Below, piece by piece: positions 37,759-43,700 of a stretch of DNA of 64,000 nt. The stretch is from the NCBI GenBank assembly GCA_964188305.1, contig OZ076901.1. One strand, written 5' to 3'. Positions within the stretch are counted from its first letter, which is position 1. Each line of letters starts with the position of its first letter. The stretch is from Podarcis bocagei (Eukaryota). Under the pieces are notes generated by a model. It was given only the letters and a program-made list of their open reading frames with translations, made no database searches and was not told the DNA's origin. Both the position numbers and the translations under genes were made by a program.

Positions 37759-37922
37759 AGGCTCATCTATGCCCCCTTCGGTCTTATAGTACCACTGAAC
37801 CAGAGTGTTGGCAGAAACCTCCTCTCGCTTCATGCAGGAGATACACAGCAGCTTCATGCGCGACCCTTGGACTGCCTCTGTCTCTGACGGTACTTCAACG
37901 CAGACTGAAGAGCAGACACCCA
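37759..37922 (-). CDS. SCN3B: SCN3B exon (V)GVCSSVCVEVPSETEAVQGSRMKLLCISCMKREEVSANTLVQWYYKTEGGIDEP
   Basis: ctttccAG / GTaagt; 164 nt; VCVEVPSETEAVQG and CISCMKREE are beta-3 signatures. Confidence 0.97.
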
Positions 37923-40070
37923 CTGGAAAGCCATGGATCAGCAGCCCAGTTTGGATATGTGAGCATATAGTGCAATTGGGAGAGGGACCCATTTCCAAGA
38001 AGGGAAAAAGGCAGAGGAAGACACAAACACATGGAGAGGGGGTGGAGCGACACAGAGAACAATCTGTTATTCAAGACGCTTGTGATTCTCAGTGAAAATA
38101 AATCTCTTAATTCAACACTGGCATTCATTGAGAATGGATTAAATATCAGGATTTGCAAAAAACCTTCCATCCTATGCTGATCTCAACCAATAATCCACAT
38201 TAAATAATAACTTGGTGCTGAATTTACTAGTGCTTTGCAGATTTATGCAGTGTCCCATCTAATTCCTCCAACACAGAAATCTGAATTGTGAGATTTCAAT
38301 GTTGCTTTGATTATTTCGGCTACAATTGAAGCACATGTGACATACAGTCAACCAACCAGAAGTTATATAATCCAGAACTGCAAGTTATTTTTTGAATCAG
38401 AAAGGCAAATGTCACTTCCCCACTCCCTCCCAGGTTCTTTTTTTTAATATTATGTTTGTTCTTTACATTTCCCCAGAGACCCTGCAAAACACATTATGAA
38501 AACCTGTATTTCTATACACACACGGCATCTGTAAAAGGCTACTTCATCCTAAAAGCTCACAGCATTTAAAAAAGGCAGAAGCATAAAATATGAATGATAA
38601 AATGCCCCCCTCAAAAGTCCTATCCCCAACACAGTATTGCAGTCTACCAGGCTCGACAGAGCTTTTCATCACCATTCTTATGTGAGAATTAGGATGCCAG
38701 AATTAGTATCATTCTGGTTCTCTTATACATAGCACAGTTTGCGCAAGTCCATGTGAACAGCTGGCACCAAGTCAGATTCTACTCAACAGTTTGAATGTTT
38801 CCCTCTTAAGTGCTACTAGCCAAGCATGTAGATAATGCTTACTGTACCCTTTCTAACTGACACTGAACAACGACAGCTTCTTTTTGCTAAGCAAACAGTG
38901 CCAGTGTTTCCCCAAGAGACATGGGGTTCAGGAAAAACATCTCCGACTTCCTTGAGCCAAGAAGCCTGCACATTGCTCTGGGGTTTCATTTACTCTGAAG
39001 AGCATTTTTGCACAGAACTCTGAAAGCATTTCTGAATCTCCTCATGTACCATTTCTGTACACATGTGAGAATGTTGTTCAGGGAATGTAGAAAAGAGAAG
39101 ACAGCCATTTTAAAACTGAATGCACATTTTAGCCAAACTAGGGAATTGCAGATGTGGGGGGAGGGGGAGAGAGAACCAATGCACCCCAAACAAACTGTTA
39201 AGTATGGCATGTGAAAATGCTTTCAACTCTCAAAAGTGCACAGAATTGACTGAAGAGCAAGGATGTAATTGTCTGTGCATTCTGCCCTCCCACAATGCTT
39301 TAAATAAAAGTTGGCACAAAAAATTGCACTTTCACAAACATGTTCTCCTTCAATGAGGCACAACCCTTTCCCTGTGACACTTCCAACACCTGTTTATCCA
39401 TTTTTACAGGCTTCATTCCCAGCTGTTCCTCTGTTGCCTTGGGATCCACAGTTTAACTGGGCGGTCTGACAAGGGACAAATCCACAGTCTAAGGGGTTGT
39501 TTCTCTGTAAGGCTTCCCAGCCAAACTGCTGTGTTCTAAGATACAGCATGGAATCCAAAGTCTTGCCTGAATACTGCTGGATTCACTATTGCAGCTGTAT
39601 TTTGGAGGTAAAATGTAAAAAGAAGAAGAAATGGTTGGAAGCCCCTTGAAAACATCTTTGAAACTCAGTTTTGACATGGGAATTTAAAGGTACTTGGGCT
39701 GTTGCCTCCTTTTCTAAACACTCCCTAGAGAGAAAGCAAGCTCCAAGTTTAATTCCTAGCATCTCCACCAGCCAAGCAGAGCTGGAAGAAACTCCTTGCC
39801 TGAAATCTTGGGACAATATTGATTTACATAGACCAGCGATCTGACTGGTAGAAGGCAGCTCCCTAAGGCCCTCCTTGAGGTGGAGTGGGGTGGGGGGAAG
39901 GAAAGTTAATATGAAAGTCATTGCAATTCGCAGCCAATTTTCCTCCGGCTTCTCTTGATATCGTGCACGTGCAGATCCAAGTGCACGAGGCCCATGGTTG
40001 CGCTTTGACTCTGTCCAACCGGGAAACAACCACAACCCTCCCCTTACTTAATTAAAGTGGTGCACAATAG

Positions 40071-40084
40071 CTCGCCATGGCAAC
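40071..40084. promoter_or_regulatory. Candidate RFX X-box in the SCN3B intron
   Basis: CTCGCCATGGCAAC versus GTTGCCATGGCAAC consensus. Confidence 0.35.
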
Positions 40085-40258
40085 CCTTCTCTCTCTCTCG
40101 AGGAGCTGCTCAGGCCCCCGGGGCAACTCGGCAACTAATGACTTCATAGAGGACCTTCTCAGGGATCCTTCCCACTGAAACGGAACCCCTCTCTCTGGCT
40201 GTCTCACAAATACACACGTTTCACATGGTTTCCTGGACCACAGGCGGGAAGCACCTAC

Positions 40259-40316
40259 CGCAAAGGACCACCACCAGCAGGGAAGAGGCGGCGGCCACCT
40301 TCGTTAGCGCAGCCAT
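40259..40316 (-). CDS. SCN3B: SCN3B first coding exon, signal peptide MAALTKVAAASSLLVVVLC
   Basis: Strong Kozak GGAGCCATGG, hydrophobic signal peptide, phase-1 donor G|GTaggt joins the next exon in frame; total CDS 654 nt = 217 aa + stop. Confidence 0.88.
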
Positions 40317-40528
40317 GGCTCCTGGAAAGGCAGACTCGGCTGGGTCTCCTTTCTCCACCAGATCTAGTAGCTTAGTCGCCGCGCAACTGGATCCGGGCGG
40401 GAGGAGGAGGAGGCGCTGGGTTGGAACCGACCGATGGGAGCAGCCGGACCAGGAGGAGGCAGGGATCAGGGAGGGCAAAGGTGCACCGTTCAAAGTCCCT
40501 TCCTGGCACTCCTCCTCTCGCAAGGGTT

Positions 40529-40549
40529 TTCAGCACCAGGGAGAGAGCC
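40529..40549 (+). promoter_or_regulatory. RE1/NRSE (REST site), copy 1
   Basis: TTCAGCACC AG GGAGAGAGCC, canonical 2-bp spacer. Confidence 0.75.
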
Positions 40550-40681
40550 CGCGGGTCGCCGCCGTCTTTGGACAGCTCCGCGCTGGAGTAGGCGCTGGGC
40601 TGGAACTCGCCGATGGGAGCAGATGGGGTTCCCGTAGGGCAGCGGTGCACTTTTAACTGACGTGGCTCCCGCGTAGCGGGT

Positions 40682-40702
40682 TTCAGCACCACGGACAGCT
40701 CC
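40682..40702 (+). promoter_or_regulatory. RE1/NRSE (REST site), copy 2
   Basis: TTCAGCACCACGGACAGCTCC, 20/21 to consensus TTCAGCACCACGGACAGCGCC. Confidence 0.92.
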
Positions 40703-43700
40703 TGCGGGTCGCCGCCCTCTTTGGACAGCTCCGCGACGGGCGGGCAGGGTCGGGGTTACCTGGCGAGGGCGACAGCGCCGGCTGTCCCTTCCCAGCTGTG
40801 GGCATCACCAGCCCCTTGGAGGCGCCTGCGCTGCGCTGCCCTGCCCCCGCCTGTGCTCAGTCCAACGGTTCGGGGGAAGGGAGGCGAGCGACAGAGGACA
40901 GCAGGGGTCTTTGGAGAGCCGCTGGGCCCGCTTCCTACAGCCCTGCGGCGCGAAGGGAGACGGGGAGAGGCCGGAGATGGAGGGGCTCCGCAGCCACCAA
41001 CCCTCGCCGTCGCCACCCTCGCCGCCACCTCCAGCTCCGAGCCTCCCCACAGGAACAATGCATCTCAAGCCGTGTGCTGGAGCCCAGCCTCCTGCGCCGG
41101 CTCTGCGTGGCTGGGAAGGCTTGTGCCCGCCTTACGAGAGCGCGAGGGTGGGTGGTGGAGGAGGAGGAGTGCCGCCGCCTCCCTTCTCCGAGCCGTGCCT
41201 GGATTGGGAACAGCCCCTCAGGACAAGCATGCGCAGACCTCTCTTTGGCAGAAGCAGGCGTCCCCCTCCCATCAGGAGAGCGAGACTCCCTTTTCCCGAT
41301 GAATTGGGGGTGGGTGGGGCGTTTCCTGCCTCTTTCCAAGCCAGCTGCTCCCAGAGCCTCTTCACATCTACACCAACCCTTCAGGGTTGTGCACGGGGGC
41401 GGGGAAGGAACCATGTGCCACCTTTATTTCCTTGGATAAAAGGTGGGATATAAATCCAGCCAATCCATCACTAATTTAAATGTGCTTTGAATGTATGGTG
41501 TGGATGTAGCCAAATCCACGGTTCACTTTCTCTGCTGAAATCTTTCATAAGCAAACAGCAGCAGGCAAAATGGAAAAAAGACCCTTTTCTGGAACAAAAT
41601 GAGTCTGGCATGGAGAGGAAAAGAGAAAGAGAGGGAGGCTGAAGGGACTGCTGCCTCCATAGCCCCCAAAGTGCCCATCATCCTAAATGATTTCCATGCA
41701 ATCTGATGGGATGTTCTTCAGTGTTTGAGTGCACAGCAATGCCTGGCATCCTGCCAGTGTTCCCTGGCAGGGGAGCCATGCTTTTCTGCTGTGGTCTCCT
41801 AAAGGTGGTAGCTAGTCGGGAGTGGCAGCAGTGGCCTGTAACAAGTCCATGTGACTGCCATTGGGAAAGCTCCAAAGGTCACTCTTGCAGCTGGAAAGGC
41901 TGAGAAAGCCTCTGTTCTCATAGATCCGGCTTGTGCCCAAAGGGTTTAGTGGCAGGAGCTGGCTGGGTCTCTTCCATCTGGAGAGGAGCCACGATTCCCA
42001 TCACACGCATCTCCAACTCTGCAGGGCAGTCTATGGTCAAACCTGAATGGATTTAGGAGGAGGGGATGCTCATTAGATCAAGCCAGGGTAGACGGGGATA
42101 TACTGACAGATTGCTGGTTGATTTGCAGTAAATTGGCAAGAATTGCAGACTCTCAGTTGTTTAACAGCAACAGGAACTAAATGACCTGCTCGCACCCAGT
42201 TGCATTGCTGGAATGAAGAAATATGTTGATGCTGCTTGTGGTTATGAAAGTGGCAAAAGTGGAGTGGGCATTTTGTGTGCTCAGTTCTGTTTTAGTACCC
42301 AAATCATATTCCTGGGCTCAGAACTATTTAATTTGTTAATAAGTGTTTATCTTTTGCATCCAGCTTCAGCTGATGGATTTGGCTTGGGGGGGGGGGGTCC
42401 TAGTAAAACACACACACACAAAAAACCAACCAAATTGAGCAAAACTCTCCATTAGATGATTTTGCAACCATGTATTTCAACCTCTCTCTCTCTTCTGCTT
42501 TCATAGAAGTAGAAAGTTCCCACCACCTTGTCTCTGGCAACAATAAAGTGCAGGAAGGGCCACTGGATGGCTGGCCTCCAAACTAGACCTGGCCAAGAGA
42601 GAGGGCTATTCTCAGAAACCCTAAGCATACCCAGCTGTCGTGTCTCTTTAAGCCAAGCCTACACATCAAAAGCAGTTCTCAGAATAAATGTATTACGCCG
42701 TAAATGTTACTCCCTTCCCTGGAAAGCAGTTGCTGCTATCTGAAGCAAGCAGGCTAGAAAACAGAGTTATATCCCTGCCTGGGGTTGGCTTTTAGAAGGC
42801 ATCAATCAGCTCTACATGCCTGTCCTCAATGCAATTTCCATGTCTTTCGTACCTGGTTGTGTTTGTGGGCTTCATTGCATCTCAAGGCACATATTTACAT
42901 AAGAGCAGATATGTGCCAAATACAAGGGATCATGTTTGCTTAAACAACACATTTTGAATTAATGTTACATGGCACCCTGTTCTTCGGTTATGTAAGATAA
43001 AACGCACATCTCCCTGAACATCTGCCAGGGGTGCCATAATTACTTGGTTGAATGCTGCCTGCTGATCCTGAATTCACTGTCCATGATGGCTGGGACTGAT
43101 GGGAGTTGTATTCCTCAAGAACTTGGAGGGCTGCAGGTTCCTCATCTTCTTAAGCCCTTTCAGCTCTGTCATTCTATTAGTATTATTTACAAATTCTTAA
43201 TCATTTTATGCATACCAATTACATTTATTTAAAAAAAAACTTCCATTTTTTTCTTCCCTTGGAGATATCATCAAAACTAAATAAAGCCTGGGAAACATGT
43301 GATCATCTATTTATTTGTTTTTTCTCTTGGAGTCATCTGCATTTTGTCTGCAGTTCACCTCATATAATCTATCCTGGGCCTAGTGGGTGGATATTGCTCA
43401 GCACTGCTTTATATAGATCTTCAGAATCTGTTAAATCAGGTGGCTTGCACTCTTGTCTGACAGCCATATGCTCACAGAAGCACTGTGAAATCATGTCTGT
43501 TTGCAGCAGGCCAGGTTCCTGTCAGGAAATGCAAGCCCCTGGATGTGAGAGGGGATGTGGGCCAGCAGAGAGCATTCATCACAGAGCAGAAGCAGTGAAG
43601 AAAAGACAGGATGTTTTCACCTGTGATTAAGAAAGAACCTGGATGGAACACTCTGACTCAACTCCTATAAATGGCCTACTTTCACTCCCAGGAACATGGC

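What the first reader, a model, noticed from the sequence alone, without database searches (positions are those of the whole stretch)
40524..40735. Duplicated RE1/NRSE module in the SCN3B 5' region: two full REST sites plus extra half-sites
Seen: a ~58-bp unit occurs twice, 153 bp apart (40524-40582, 40678-40735). Each unit has a full RE1 (40529 TTCAGCACCAGGGAGAGAGCC; 40682 TTCAGCACCACGGACAGCTCC), then gcgggtcgccgcc, then a further right half-site GGACAGCTCC (40570, 40723). More GACAGC half-sites lie at ~40770-40790 and ~40896. Known: RE1 binds REST/NRSF and silences neuronal genes, including sodium channel genes. Inference: a local duplication multiplied REST sites, and the motif-bearing core was kept while the flanks diverged. 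That suggests selection for a strong or cooperative silencer restricting beta-3 expression.
Basis: partly seen in the sequence, partly recalled or inferred. Interest (0 to 1): 0.72.

Follow-up and report, generated by a model that had tools for sequence, protein, structure and literature searches.

The report
Duplicated REST silencer before lizard SCN3B
Just upstream of the start codon of the sodium-channel beta-3 gene (SCN3B) of a wall lizard lies an ancient binding site for the neuronal-gene silencer REST that wall-lizard relatives have duplicated in tandem and kept in both copies; it is a real, tidy example of a known kind of regulatory element.

Summary
SCN3B lies on the minus strand, with its ATG at 40316. 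A unit of about 150-177 bp (40406-40582 and 40585-40735) is tandemly duplicated 213-419 nt upstream of that ATG. Each copy has a 21-bp RE1/NRSE (40529-40549, one mismatch; 40682-40702, none). Each also has a right half-site, GGACAGCTCC, 20 nt further on.

These two RE1s are the only matches in the 64 kb window. The duplication is not an assembly artefact or a transposon. It appears in read-derived contigs of two species labels and in the independent Zootoca and Lacerta assemblies.

Nine other amniote genomes were scanned. Seven have a single RE1 at the same place and in the same orientation: snake, amphisbaenian, iguanian, anguid, gecko, turtle, falcon and marsupial minus the two lacertids. 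The site is therefore amniote-wide, and the proximal copy is the ancestral one. The distal copy is a lacertid addition, much older than the Podarcis/Lacerta/Zootoca split.

Motif positions are far better conserved than the rest of the unit, both between species (P = 2.6e-4) and between the two copies (P = 0.002). The extra half-site is ancestral (gecko to lacertids, and turtle), not a product of the duplication. The half-sites at 40769-40794 occur only in Podarcis.

REST binding and any cooperative silencing were not tested. Human SCN3B is already a ChIP-verified REST target. The scan's first readers also noted paired RE1s at KCNT1 and CACNG3 in this genome; I did not check those.

The parts
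40529..40549 (+). Proximal RE1/NRSE, TTCAGCACCAGGGAGAGAGCC (GGAGAG type). It reads antisense to SCN3B, at -213 to -233 from the ATG. This is the ancestral copy, orthologous to the single RE1 of other amniotes.
   Evidence: one mismatch to the consensus; all 21 bases are identical in Zootoca and Lacerta, and seven other amniotes have a single RE1 at the same relative place and orientation. One search aligns it with the Rhineura and Elgaria site; it is covered by RNA contigs and RNA reads, so it lies in the 5'UTR.
40682..40702 (+). Distal RE1/NRSE, TTCAGCACCACGGACAGCTCC. It matches every specified consensus position and lies at -366 to -386 from the ATG. This is the lacertid-specific extra copy.
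   Evidence: no mismatches; present in Zootoca and Lacerta with a change only at position 6 (C, G or A), and absent from Rhineura, Elgaria, Naja, Sceloporus and Heteronotia. One search shows it as a clean insertion of about 153 nt relative to Rhineura and Elgaria.
40570..40579 (+). Solitary right half-site GGACAGCTCC, 20 nt after the proximal RE1.
   Evidence: The exact 10-mer sits 19-20 nt from the RE1 in Rhineura, Sceloporus and the lacertids. It is GGAGAGCTCC in Elgaria, lies 9 nt away in the gecko and 48 nt away in the turtle. No column varies among the three lacertids.
40723..40732 (+). Solitary right half-site GGACAGCTCC, 20 nt after the distal RE1.
   Evidence: 0 of 10 columns vary among lacertids.
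40406..40582 (.). Proximal tandem unit (177 nt). In gene orientation it runs half-site, spacer, RE1, variable middle, D2 block.
40585..40735 (.). Distal tandem unit (151 nt), with the same order of parts. It has deletions of 11 and 15 nt in the middle relative to the proximal unit.
40406..40443 (.). D2 block, proximal copy. It is a conserved 38-nt block with no RE1 and unknown function.
   Evidence: 87% identical to 40585-40622; it is recognisable in Rhineura.
40585..40622 (.). D2 block, distal copy.
40259..40316 (-). Coding part of SCN3B exon 1 (signal peptide MAALTKVAAASSLLVVVLC, then the first base of the next codon), followed by a GT donor at 40258-40257.
   Evidence: ORF; spliced RNA contig X15 record 11 ends at 40259 and continues with exon-2 letters; the N-terminus is identical to Podarcis SCN3B proteins P0066 and P0118.
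37759..37922 (-). SCN3B exon 2 (start of the V-set Ig domain, VCVEVPSETEAV...). Included only to fix the gene's identity and strand.
   Evidence: The loose-end letters of X15 match its start.

Best explanation
This is a pair of REST/NRSF silencer modules in the 5'UTR and proximal promoter of SCN3B, inside a CpG island.

Ancestral state (shown). Amniotes carry one 21-bp RE1 130-300 nt upstream of the SCN3B ATG, reading antisense to the gene. In squamates and a turtle it is accompanied by a solitary right half-site.

Duplication (shown). In the lacertid lineage, after it separated from amphisbaenians and well before Podarcis, Lacerta and Zootoca diverged, a tandem duplication of about 153 bp copied the whole module. 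Both copies have since kept their motif positions while the rest of the unit decayed.

Mechanism (inferred from established knowledge of REST). In non-neuronal cells and neural progenitors, REST's zinc fingers bind each RE1. REST recruits the Sin3/HDAC and CoREST complexes, which keep the SCN3B promoter silent. When REST falls in neurons, the gene is released.

Effect of two sites (inferred). Two strong sites 153 bp apart, plus two weak half-sites, should raise occupancy and make silencing more robust in lacertids than the single site does in other squamates. That gain is not shown.
For: Motif match:
- these are the only two matches in 64 kb, with 0 and 1 mismatches.
- The proximal GGAGAG type is the same type as the experimentally used SCG10 NRSE, TTCAGCACCACGGAGAGTGCC (PMC2854381). 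That sequence is identical to the Elgaria SCN3B site.
- The distal site matches the canonical TTCAGCACCACGGACAGCGCC (PMC3529185) at 20 of 21 positions.

Gene context:
- SCN3B is on the minus strand.
- The RE1 of human SCN3B is occupied by REST in ChIP-PCR (PMC6386196).
- Scn3b is upregulated when REST is inhibited in mouse (PMC6965066).

Conservation:
- Naja, Rhineura, Sceloporus, Elgaria, Heteronotia, Mauremys, Falco and Antechinus each have one RE1, in the same orientation, 130-749 nt upstream of the ATG.
- Zootoca and Lacerta have two, spaced 152-153 nt apart.

Constraint:
- Among the three lacertids, 1 of 62 motif columns varies, against 46 of 260 in the rest of the units (P = 2.6e-4).
- Between the two copies, 1 of 27 informative motif positions differs, against 37 of 124 elsewhere (P = 0.002).

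Age:
- K2P distance between the copies is about 0.31, against 0.05-0.12 between genera.
- The proximal copies form a clade with 95/96 support.

The duplication is real:
- One 4974-nt contig of X11 spans both copies, and X2 contigs tile them.

Precedent:
- Tandem canonical RE1s lie near two of the most REST-responsive genes, Snap25 and Celsr3 (PMC2573930).
- A synthetic 2xNRSE restricts expression to the nervous system in zebrafish (PMC3529185).
Against: - No binding or expression data exist for any lizard.
- The proximal site has G rather than C at position 15. That lies within positions 12-17, which Jothi et al. call critical.
- The distal site shows C, G and A at position 6 in the three genera. 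This suggests relaxed constraint there and possibly a weaker site in Zootoca.
- The constraint test rests on three closely related species (about 94% identical overall) and on short sequences.
- The spacer and the D2 block, which are not REST motifs, are also conserved. Something other than REST is therefore constrained in the unit as well.
- Half-sites alone bind weakly and do not repress effectively (PMC2532738).
Confidence: 0.78

Rival explanations
1. Only the ancestral proximal RE1 works. The distal copy is a redundant by-product of a neutral tandem duplication in a slippage-prone, GC-rich CpG island, and looks conserved only because the whole 5' region evolves slowly in lacertids.
For: - The 900 nt upstream of the ATG are 94-95% identical among the three lacertids, so resolution is low.
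- The distal RE1 has three different bases at position 6.
- Non-lacertid squamates manage with one site.
- Nearby GGA/CTC microsatellites vary in length, which shows local slippage.
Against: - The two copies have diverged by about 25% plus 29 gapped columns, yet only 1 of 27 informative motif positions differs (P = 0.002).
- Within the distal unit, the 58-nt core has 1 variable column among lacertids, against 12 of 59 in the adjacent middle part.
- The distal site is the better match to the consensus.
- Position 6 lies outside the positions reported as critical (7-9 and 12-17), and the marsupial orthologous site also has A there.
Confidence: 0.15
2. The conserved blocks act at the RNA level in the SCN3B 5'UTR (structure, translation control or a small upstream ORF), and the resemblance to RE1 is secondary.
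For: - The proximal unit is transcribed. RNA contigs cover 40259-40679, and RNA reads with their first mate on the + strand cover 40212-40615.
- An open frame on the minus strand (40372-40692) runs through both cores.
- The spacer and D2 blocks are conserved without being REST motifs.
Against: - The RNA fold of 40318-40740 on the gene strand is no better than shuffles (z = -0.83; 19 of 100 shuffles fold as well).
- The open frame is not in frame with the SCN3B ATG and has no ATG of its own.
- The two D2 copies are 179 nt apart, which is not a multiple of 3.
- Elgaria has a 1-nt deletion in the spacer, and the gecko spacer is 11 nt shorter.
- What is conserved across amniotes is exactly the 21-bp RE1, with variable flanks.
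Confidence: 0.04
3. The repeat is an assembly duplication or a transposon-borne RE1.
For: Logan contigs of X2 and X15 break inside the region, as happens at repeats. TE-mediated spread of RE1s is known in mammals (PMC4499139).
Against: - A single X11 contig spans 39000-41128 with both copies.
- Both copies are present in the independent Zootoca and Lacerta assemblies.
- DNA word depth over 40515-40817 is single-copy level. By contrast, the true repeat at about 41475-41507 reaches 826.
- The unit is orthologous to single-copy 5'UTR sequence in Rhineura and Elgaria.
- There is no other copy in the 64 kb window.
Confidence: 0.01

Closest known systems
The RE1 of mammalian SCN3B (REST ChIP-PCR target in human neural progenitors, PMC6386196; Scn3b upregulated on REST inhibition in mouse, PMC6965066)
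   Same: It belongs to the same gene. The marsupial Antechinus has a single RE1 301 nt upstream of the ATG in the same antisense orientation. The lizard proximal site is therefore most simply the ortholog of the mammalian one.
   Different: I did not compare with human sequence, so orthology to the human ChIP-verified site is inferred through the marsupial. Squamates use the GGAGAG variant of the right half. Lacertids have two full sites instead of one.
SCG10 (STMN2) NRSE, TTCAGCACCACGGAGAGTGCC, the classic functional NRSE used in reporters (PMC2854381)
   Same: Its 21-mer is identical to the Elgaria SCN3B site and has the same GGAGAG right half as all squamate proximal sites.
   Different: It belongs to a different gene. 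The lacertid proximal site differs from it at positions 11, 18 and 19, which carry little information.
Natural tandem canonical RE1s near Snap25 and Celsr3 (PMC2573930), and the engineered 2xNRSE cassette (PMC3529185)
   Same: Both have two full RE1s within 1 kb of a promoter. In mouse stem cells such genes are among the most REST-responsive. The synthetic pair restricts expression to neurons in zebrafish.
   Different: Here the origin of the pair can be seen: a dated tandem duplication of about 153 bp of an older single module. Each RE1 also brings a solitary right half-site with it.
Lineage-specific gain of RE1s in mammals, often through transposable elements (PMC4499139)
   Same: A lineage gains an extra RE1 at a neural gene.
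   Different: The mechanism here is a local tandem duplication of unique promoter and 5'UTR DNA, not a transposon. The gain adds a site to a gene that was already a target rather than recruiting a new target.

Membership tests
RE1/NRSE (REST-binding element) | 21-bp bipartite motif: left half TCAGCACC, 2-nt spacer, right half GGACAGCGCC | tested here: met
   0 mismatches (distal) and 1 mismatch (proximal) to TTCAGCACCNNGGACAGNNCC. They are the only matches in 64 kb, against 0.30 expected by chance.
RE1/NRSE (REST-binding element) | Intact critical positions 7-9 and 12-17 (Jothi et al., PMC2532738) | tested here: met
   The distal site has ACC and GGACAG, both intact. The proximal site has ACC and GGAGAG, with G at position 15. 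That is the same variant as the functional SCG10 NRSE, so I count it as met with that caveat.
RE1/NRSE (REST-binding element) | Lies at a neuron-specific gene known to be a REST target | tested here: met
   The gene is identified as SCN3B. Human SCN3B RE1 ChIP-PCR is reported in PMC6386196.
RE1/NRSE (REST-binding element) | Conservation of the motif at the orthologous place | tested here: met
   ten other amniote genomes carry an RE1 in the same orientation just upstream of the ATG; motif positions are conserved above the flanks.
RE1/NRSE (REST-binding element) | REST occupancy in vivo | not testable with these tools
   No lizard ChIP or CUT&RUN data were reachable.
RE1/NRSE (REST-binding element) | REST-dependent repression of the linked gene | not testable with these tools
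   Needs reporter assays or REST perturbation.
Local tandem duplication of a cis-regulatory module | Two head-to-tail units, homologous over their whole length | tested here: met
   40406-40582 against 40585-40735, E = 8e-19; the D1 and D2 blocks are in the same order.
Local tandem duplication of a cis-regulatory module | Single copy at the orthologous place in outgroups | tested here: met
   one unit in Rhineura, Elgaria, Naja, Sceloporus and Heteronotia. The window shows a clean extra stretch of about 153 nt.
Local tandem duplication of a cis-regulatory module | Present in independent data, so not an assembly artefact | tested here: met
   X11 spanning contig, X2 contigs; Zootoca and Lacerta assemblies.
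Transposon-borne RE1 | The unit is multi-copy in the genome or matches an interspersed repeat | tested here: not met
   DNA word depth over the units is at single-copy level, unlike the repeat at about 41475-41507; the unit is orthologous to unique sequence in outgroups.
Non-canonical RE1 (half-sites with altered spacing) | Left and right halves separated by 0-1 nt or by 7-11 extra nt (PMC2573930) | tested here: not met
   The solitary right half-site starts 32 nt after the end of the left half, and 9-48 nt after the full RE1 in other species. That is outside the reported spacings. It is a separate half-site, not part of a stretched RE1.

The most novel reading that the evidence does not exclude
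The solitary right half-site is a working partner of the RE1. Together they would form a composite 'full site plus right half-site' module. It has been kept at a 19-20-nt spacing across iguanians, anguimorphs, amphisbaenians and lacertids, and is also present in a gecko and a turtle. It might capture a second REST molecule or a different factor.

Lacertids then doubled the whole composite into a four-site array one nucleosome-length apart. This would give them a measurably tighter or differently timed silencing of beta-3 than other squamates have. That would make a natural, dated experiment in how the dosage of silencer sites evolves.
Probability: 0.2. Interest if true: 0.55.

Novelty: new member of a known kind. 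Interest (0 to 1): 0.4.

Why it matters
RE1/REST silencing of neuronal genes, including SCN3B, is textbook biology, so the element itself is not new.

What this locus adds is a clean evolutionary series. Most amniotes sampled have one RE1 at a fixed place upstream of the SCN3B ATG. Squamates and a turtle add an old, conserved solitary right half-site beside it. Lacertids have a dated tandem duplication of the whole module, with both copies held under constraint.

That makes it a convenient natural system for a question usually studied with synthetic constructs: does a second full RE1, or an adjacent half-site, change REST occupancy and the tightness of silencing? It also shows a route other than transposons by which RE1 number grows.

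Tried and rejected
- Coding repeat. On the minus strand the cores translate to similar peptides, and an open frame (40372-40692) spans them. I rejected this reading for four reasons. The frame is not that of the SCN3B ATG. The D2 copies are out of frame, at 179-nt spacing. Elgaria and the gecko have frame-breaking length changes. There is no ATG.
- Third, older unit at 40736-40940. The local match has E = 0.94 and the alignment is unconvincing.
- RNA structure in the 5'UTR. z = -0.83.
- Transposon or assembly artefact. Rejected.
- Word search with exon 3 alone. It gave only four fragments, though one of them (Naja, P0004) opened the way to full-length orthologs.
- Look-ups of P0125 (Lacerta isoform X2) and P0062 (Pelobates) were not on record. 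No amphibian or fish locus was obtained, so conservation deeper than amniotes is untested.
- The tree could not place Rhineura relative to the two lacertid copies. A duplication before the lacertid-amphisbaenian split, followed by loss in Rhineura, is not excluded.
- No REST position weight matrix was available offline. Scoring used consensus mismatches instead of FIMO.
- I did not fetch or compare any human sequence.
Full report
**1. What is in the sequence**

The region 40000-42000 is a GC-rich island: GC is 0.64 and 0.56, against about 0.45 elsewhere. One search finds two direct-repeat families:
- D1: 58 nt at 40525-40582 and 40678-40735, 88% identical, spacing 153.
- D2: 38 nt at 40406-40443 and 40585-40622, 87% identical, spacing 179.

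These are parts of one tandem duplication. A sensitive self-comparison aligns 40406-40582 with 40585-40735 at 68% identity over 177 columns with 26 gaps, E = 8e-19.

I searched both strands of the 64 kb for the pattern TTCAGCACCNNGGACAGNNCC with up to three mismatches. It matches only 40529-40549 (one mismatch) and 40682-40702 (none), against 0.30 matches expected from shuffles. GGACAGCKCC occurs four times in the window, three of them here.

A third unit further upstream is not supported.

**2. Which gene, which strand, and where relative to the transcript**

Six-frame motif searches locate SCN3B exons on the minus strand: VCVEVPSETEAV at about 37870, the transmembrane exon at about 33830, and the last exon at about 32960.

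The first coding exon starts with the ATG whose A is at 40316 and ends at 40259. This is shown directly by a spliced RNA contig of run X15. It covers 40259-40404 and then continues with letters that match the start of exon 2. The N-terminus MAALTKVAAASSLLVVVLCVGVCSS... is identical to the annotated SCN3B of Podarcis lilfordi and P. raffonei. The window is therefore from Podarcis or a very close relative.

The proximal RE1 lies at -213 to -233 from the ATG and the distal one at -366 to -386. Both read antisense to the gene.

RNA contigs of X15 cover 40259-40679. Three raw RNA reads of X24 cover 40212-40615 with first mates on the + strand, as expected in most stranded libraries for an RNA from the minus strand. 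The proximal module is therefore inside the 5'UTR. Whether the distal RE1 is transcribed is open. X15 has no contig over 40717-40817 but does again over 40851-41747.

**3. Real duplication, not an artefact or a transposon**

- One 4974-nt contig of DNA run X11 (organism E, about 2% diverged) spans 39000-41128 with both copies.
- Contigs of X2 (organism A, another study) tile the region. One bridges 40553-40733.
- DNA word depth over the units is at single-copy level. A true interspersed repeat at about 41475-41507 reaches 826.

**4. Comparative evidence**

A word search with exon 3 found a partial Naja naja protein. Using it as the query returned SCN3B of many vertebrates. A third search and a cluster look-up gave the long lacertid isoforms. 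I fetched ten loci with 10 kb of 5' flank and scanned them the same way.

Species with one RE1, always antisense to the gene and just upstream of the ATG:

| Species | Distance upstream of ATG (nt) |
|---|---|
| Naja | 177 |
| Rhineura | 173 |
| Elgaria | 212 |
| Heteronotia | 172 |
| Sceloporus | 749 (CT microsatellites lie in between) |
| Mauremys | 272 |
| Falco | 130 |
| Antechinus | 301 |

Zootoca and Lacerta have two RE1s, 153 and 152 nt apart, as in the window.

The proximal lacertid site is identical in all three genera. It shares the GGAGAG right half with every other squamate. In a multiple alignment it falls on the Rhineura and Elgaria site, and the window shows a clean extra stretch of about 153 nt upstream of it.

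Three conclusions follow:
- The RE1 is at least as old as amniotes.
- The proximal copy is the ancestral one.
- The distal copy is a lacertid addition.

**5. Age of the duplication**

On the same columns the K2P distances are:
- about 0.31 between the two copies;
- 0.05-0.12 between genera for orthologous copies;
- 0.23-0.32 between either copy and Rhineura.

In a maximum-likelihood tree the three proximal copies form a clade (95/96). The distal copies and Rhineura are unresolved.

The duplication is therefore several times older than the split of the three genera. It falls near, or after, the separation from amphisbaenians. A still earlier origin with loss in Rhineura cannot be excluded.

Each copy retains different ancestral features seen in Rhineura. 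The proximal copy keeps CAGGAAGGGACT and GCCTCCTCCTGG. The distal copy keeps GTTAAAGGCGCGC. This is what is expected if both descend from a Rhineura-like single unit.

**6. Constraint**

Among the three lacertids, 1 of 62 motif columns varies (two RE1s plus two half-sites). In the rest of the two units 46 of 260 vary (one-sided Fisher P = 2.6e-4). In all non-coding columns of the 900-nt alignment 113 of 855 vary (P = 0.002).

Between the two copies in the window, 1 of 27 informative motif positions differs, against 37 of 124 other aligned positions plus 29 gapped columns (P = 0.002). Three of the four differences inside the 21-mer fall on positions 11, 18 and 19, which carry little information.

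Caveats:
- Only three closely related species are compared.
- The sequences are short.
- The 20-nt spacer and the D2 block are also well kept, so REST motifs are not the only constrained parts.
- The single variable motif column is position 6 of the distal RE1, which is C, G and A in the three genera. That position lies outside those reported as most critical (7-9 and 12-17; PMC2532738). The marsupial orthologous site also has A there.

**7. The extra half-site**

GGACAGCTCC follows the RE1 at these spacings:
- 19-20 nt in both lacertid copies, in Rhineura and in Sceloporus;
- 19 nt in Elgaria, as GGAGAGCTCC;
- 9 nt in the gecko;
- 48 nt in the turtle.

It is missing in Naja, Falco and Antechinus. 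In the 625 kb scanned (both strands of the ten loci), the exact 10-mer occurs only three times away from these modules.

The half-site is therefore an old, conserved companion of the RE1 rather than a product of the duplication. Published ChIP-seq work finds that solitary half-sites are bound weakly and do not repress effectively on their own (PMC2532738). Right half-sites alone make up about 10% of REST-bound sites (PMC2573930).

The further GACAGC motifs at 40769-40794 are changed in Zootoca and Lacerta and are probably chance. The one at about 40897 is conserved among lacertids, but so is most of that region.

**8. How it most likely works**

Shown:
- motif quality;
- position relative to the gene;
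- orthology across amniotes;
- the duplication and its relative age;
- constraint on both copies.

Known from the literature:
- Human SCN3B carries an RE1 occupied by REST (PMC6386196).
- Scn3b rises when REST is inhibited (PMC6965066).
- The GGAGAG-type NRSE of SCG10, identical to the Elgaria site, is a functional silencer whose GG at positions 12-13 is essential (PMC2854381).
- NRSEs work in non-mammalian vertebrates, and a pair of them restricts expression to neurons (PMC3529185).
- Tandem RE1s lie at some of the most REST-responsive genes (PMC2573930).

Inferred:
- In lizards REST binds both sites and silences SCN3B outside neurons through its usual co-repressors.
- The second site raises occupancy or robustness.

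**9. Rivals**

- Redundant distal copy: about 0.15.
- RNA-level function: about 0.04. The fold z-score is -0.83, and the upstream frame is broken in other species.
- Artefact or transposon: about 0.01.

**10. Verdict**

This is a real and well-behaved regulatory feature. The element type and the target gene are already known. What is new is a lacertid-specific, old and constrained tandem duplication of an amniote-wide RE1 module, together with the observation that a solitary right half-site has travelled with this RE1 since early squamates.

I rate the interest as moderate.

The scan's first readers also noted paired RE1 motifs at KCNT1 and CACNG3 in this genome. I did not check them.

**Limits**

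There are no binding or expression tests, no PWM scan, and no loci from amphibians, fishes, teiids or other lacertid subfamilies. The transcription start site is unknown.

Noticed in passing
window 41475-41507: A short stretch with DNA word depth of 826 (X2) and 514 (X11), against about 10 around it. Many different loose ends lie on both sides. It is a fragment of a high-copy interspersed repeat about 1.2 kb upstream of the SCN3B ATG.
   Followed up: no
window 40851-42000: Run X15 has an 885-nt contig over 40851-41747 at depth 17. Its depth rises to 65-100 over 41727-42000. That is higher than over SCN3B exon 1 (47) and intron 1 (about 6), while DNA depth there is normal. This could be an upstream non-coding exon, a long 5'UTR or a divergent promoter transcript. 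The strand is unknown.
   Followed up: no
window 40406-40443 and 40585-40622: The D2 block (in gene orientation CTGCTCCCATCGG..TTCCA.CCCAGCGCC) is kept at 87% between the two units and is recognisable in Rhineura. It contains no REST motif and its function is unknown.
   Followed up: partly
window 40564: The window has G here, where all four runs laid on it read C, including one with the same species label. Zootoca has the matching base. This is a private variant or a consensus error. With C, the two D1 copies would be 52 of 58 identical.
   Followed up: partly
window 40548: C>T at position 20 of the proximal RE1 in the RNA data of organism E (X15, X24), but not in a DNA run with the same species label (X11). 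It is a polymorphism inside the motif.
   Followed up: no
window 40769-40794: GCGACAGCGCC and, on the other strand, GGGACAGCCGG form a near-palindrome carrying two GACAGC cores. Both cores are changed in Zootoca and Lacerta, so they occur only in Podarcis.
   Followed up: yes
window 41148-41170 and 40397-40414: GGA/CTC microsatellites vary in length between runs (insertions of 6 and 15 nt, and a 1-nt indel at 40405) and between lacertid genera. In Sceloporus, CT-rich arrays have pushed the RE1 to 749 nt from the ATG.
   Followed up: no
L002 14692-14712 (Rhineura, SCN3B intron): A second RE1-like 21-mer with one mismatch, TTTAGCACCTTGGACAGCTCC, lies on the sense strand in an intron. It has no counterpart in the window at up to 3 mismatches.
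   Followed up: no
proteins P0128-P0135 (birds) and P0130 (Hemicordylus): Some annotated SCN3B proteins are 241-337 aa instead of about 215. These may be N-terminal over-extensions through the GC-rich, stop-poor 5'UTR that holds the RE1.
   Followed up: no
proteins P0118, P0136, P0127, P0137 (lacertids): Lacertid SCN3B is annotated with several isoforms of 197, 199, 217, 234 and 242 aa that differ after the Ig domain. This suggests alternative 3' exons.
   Followed up: no
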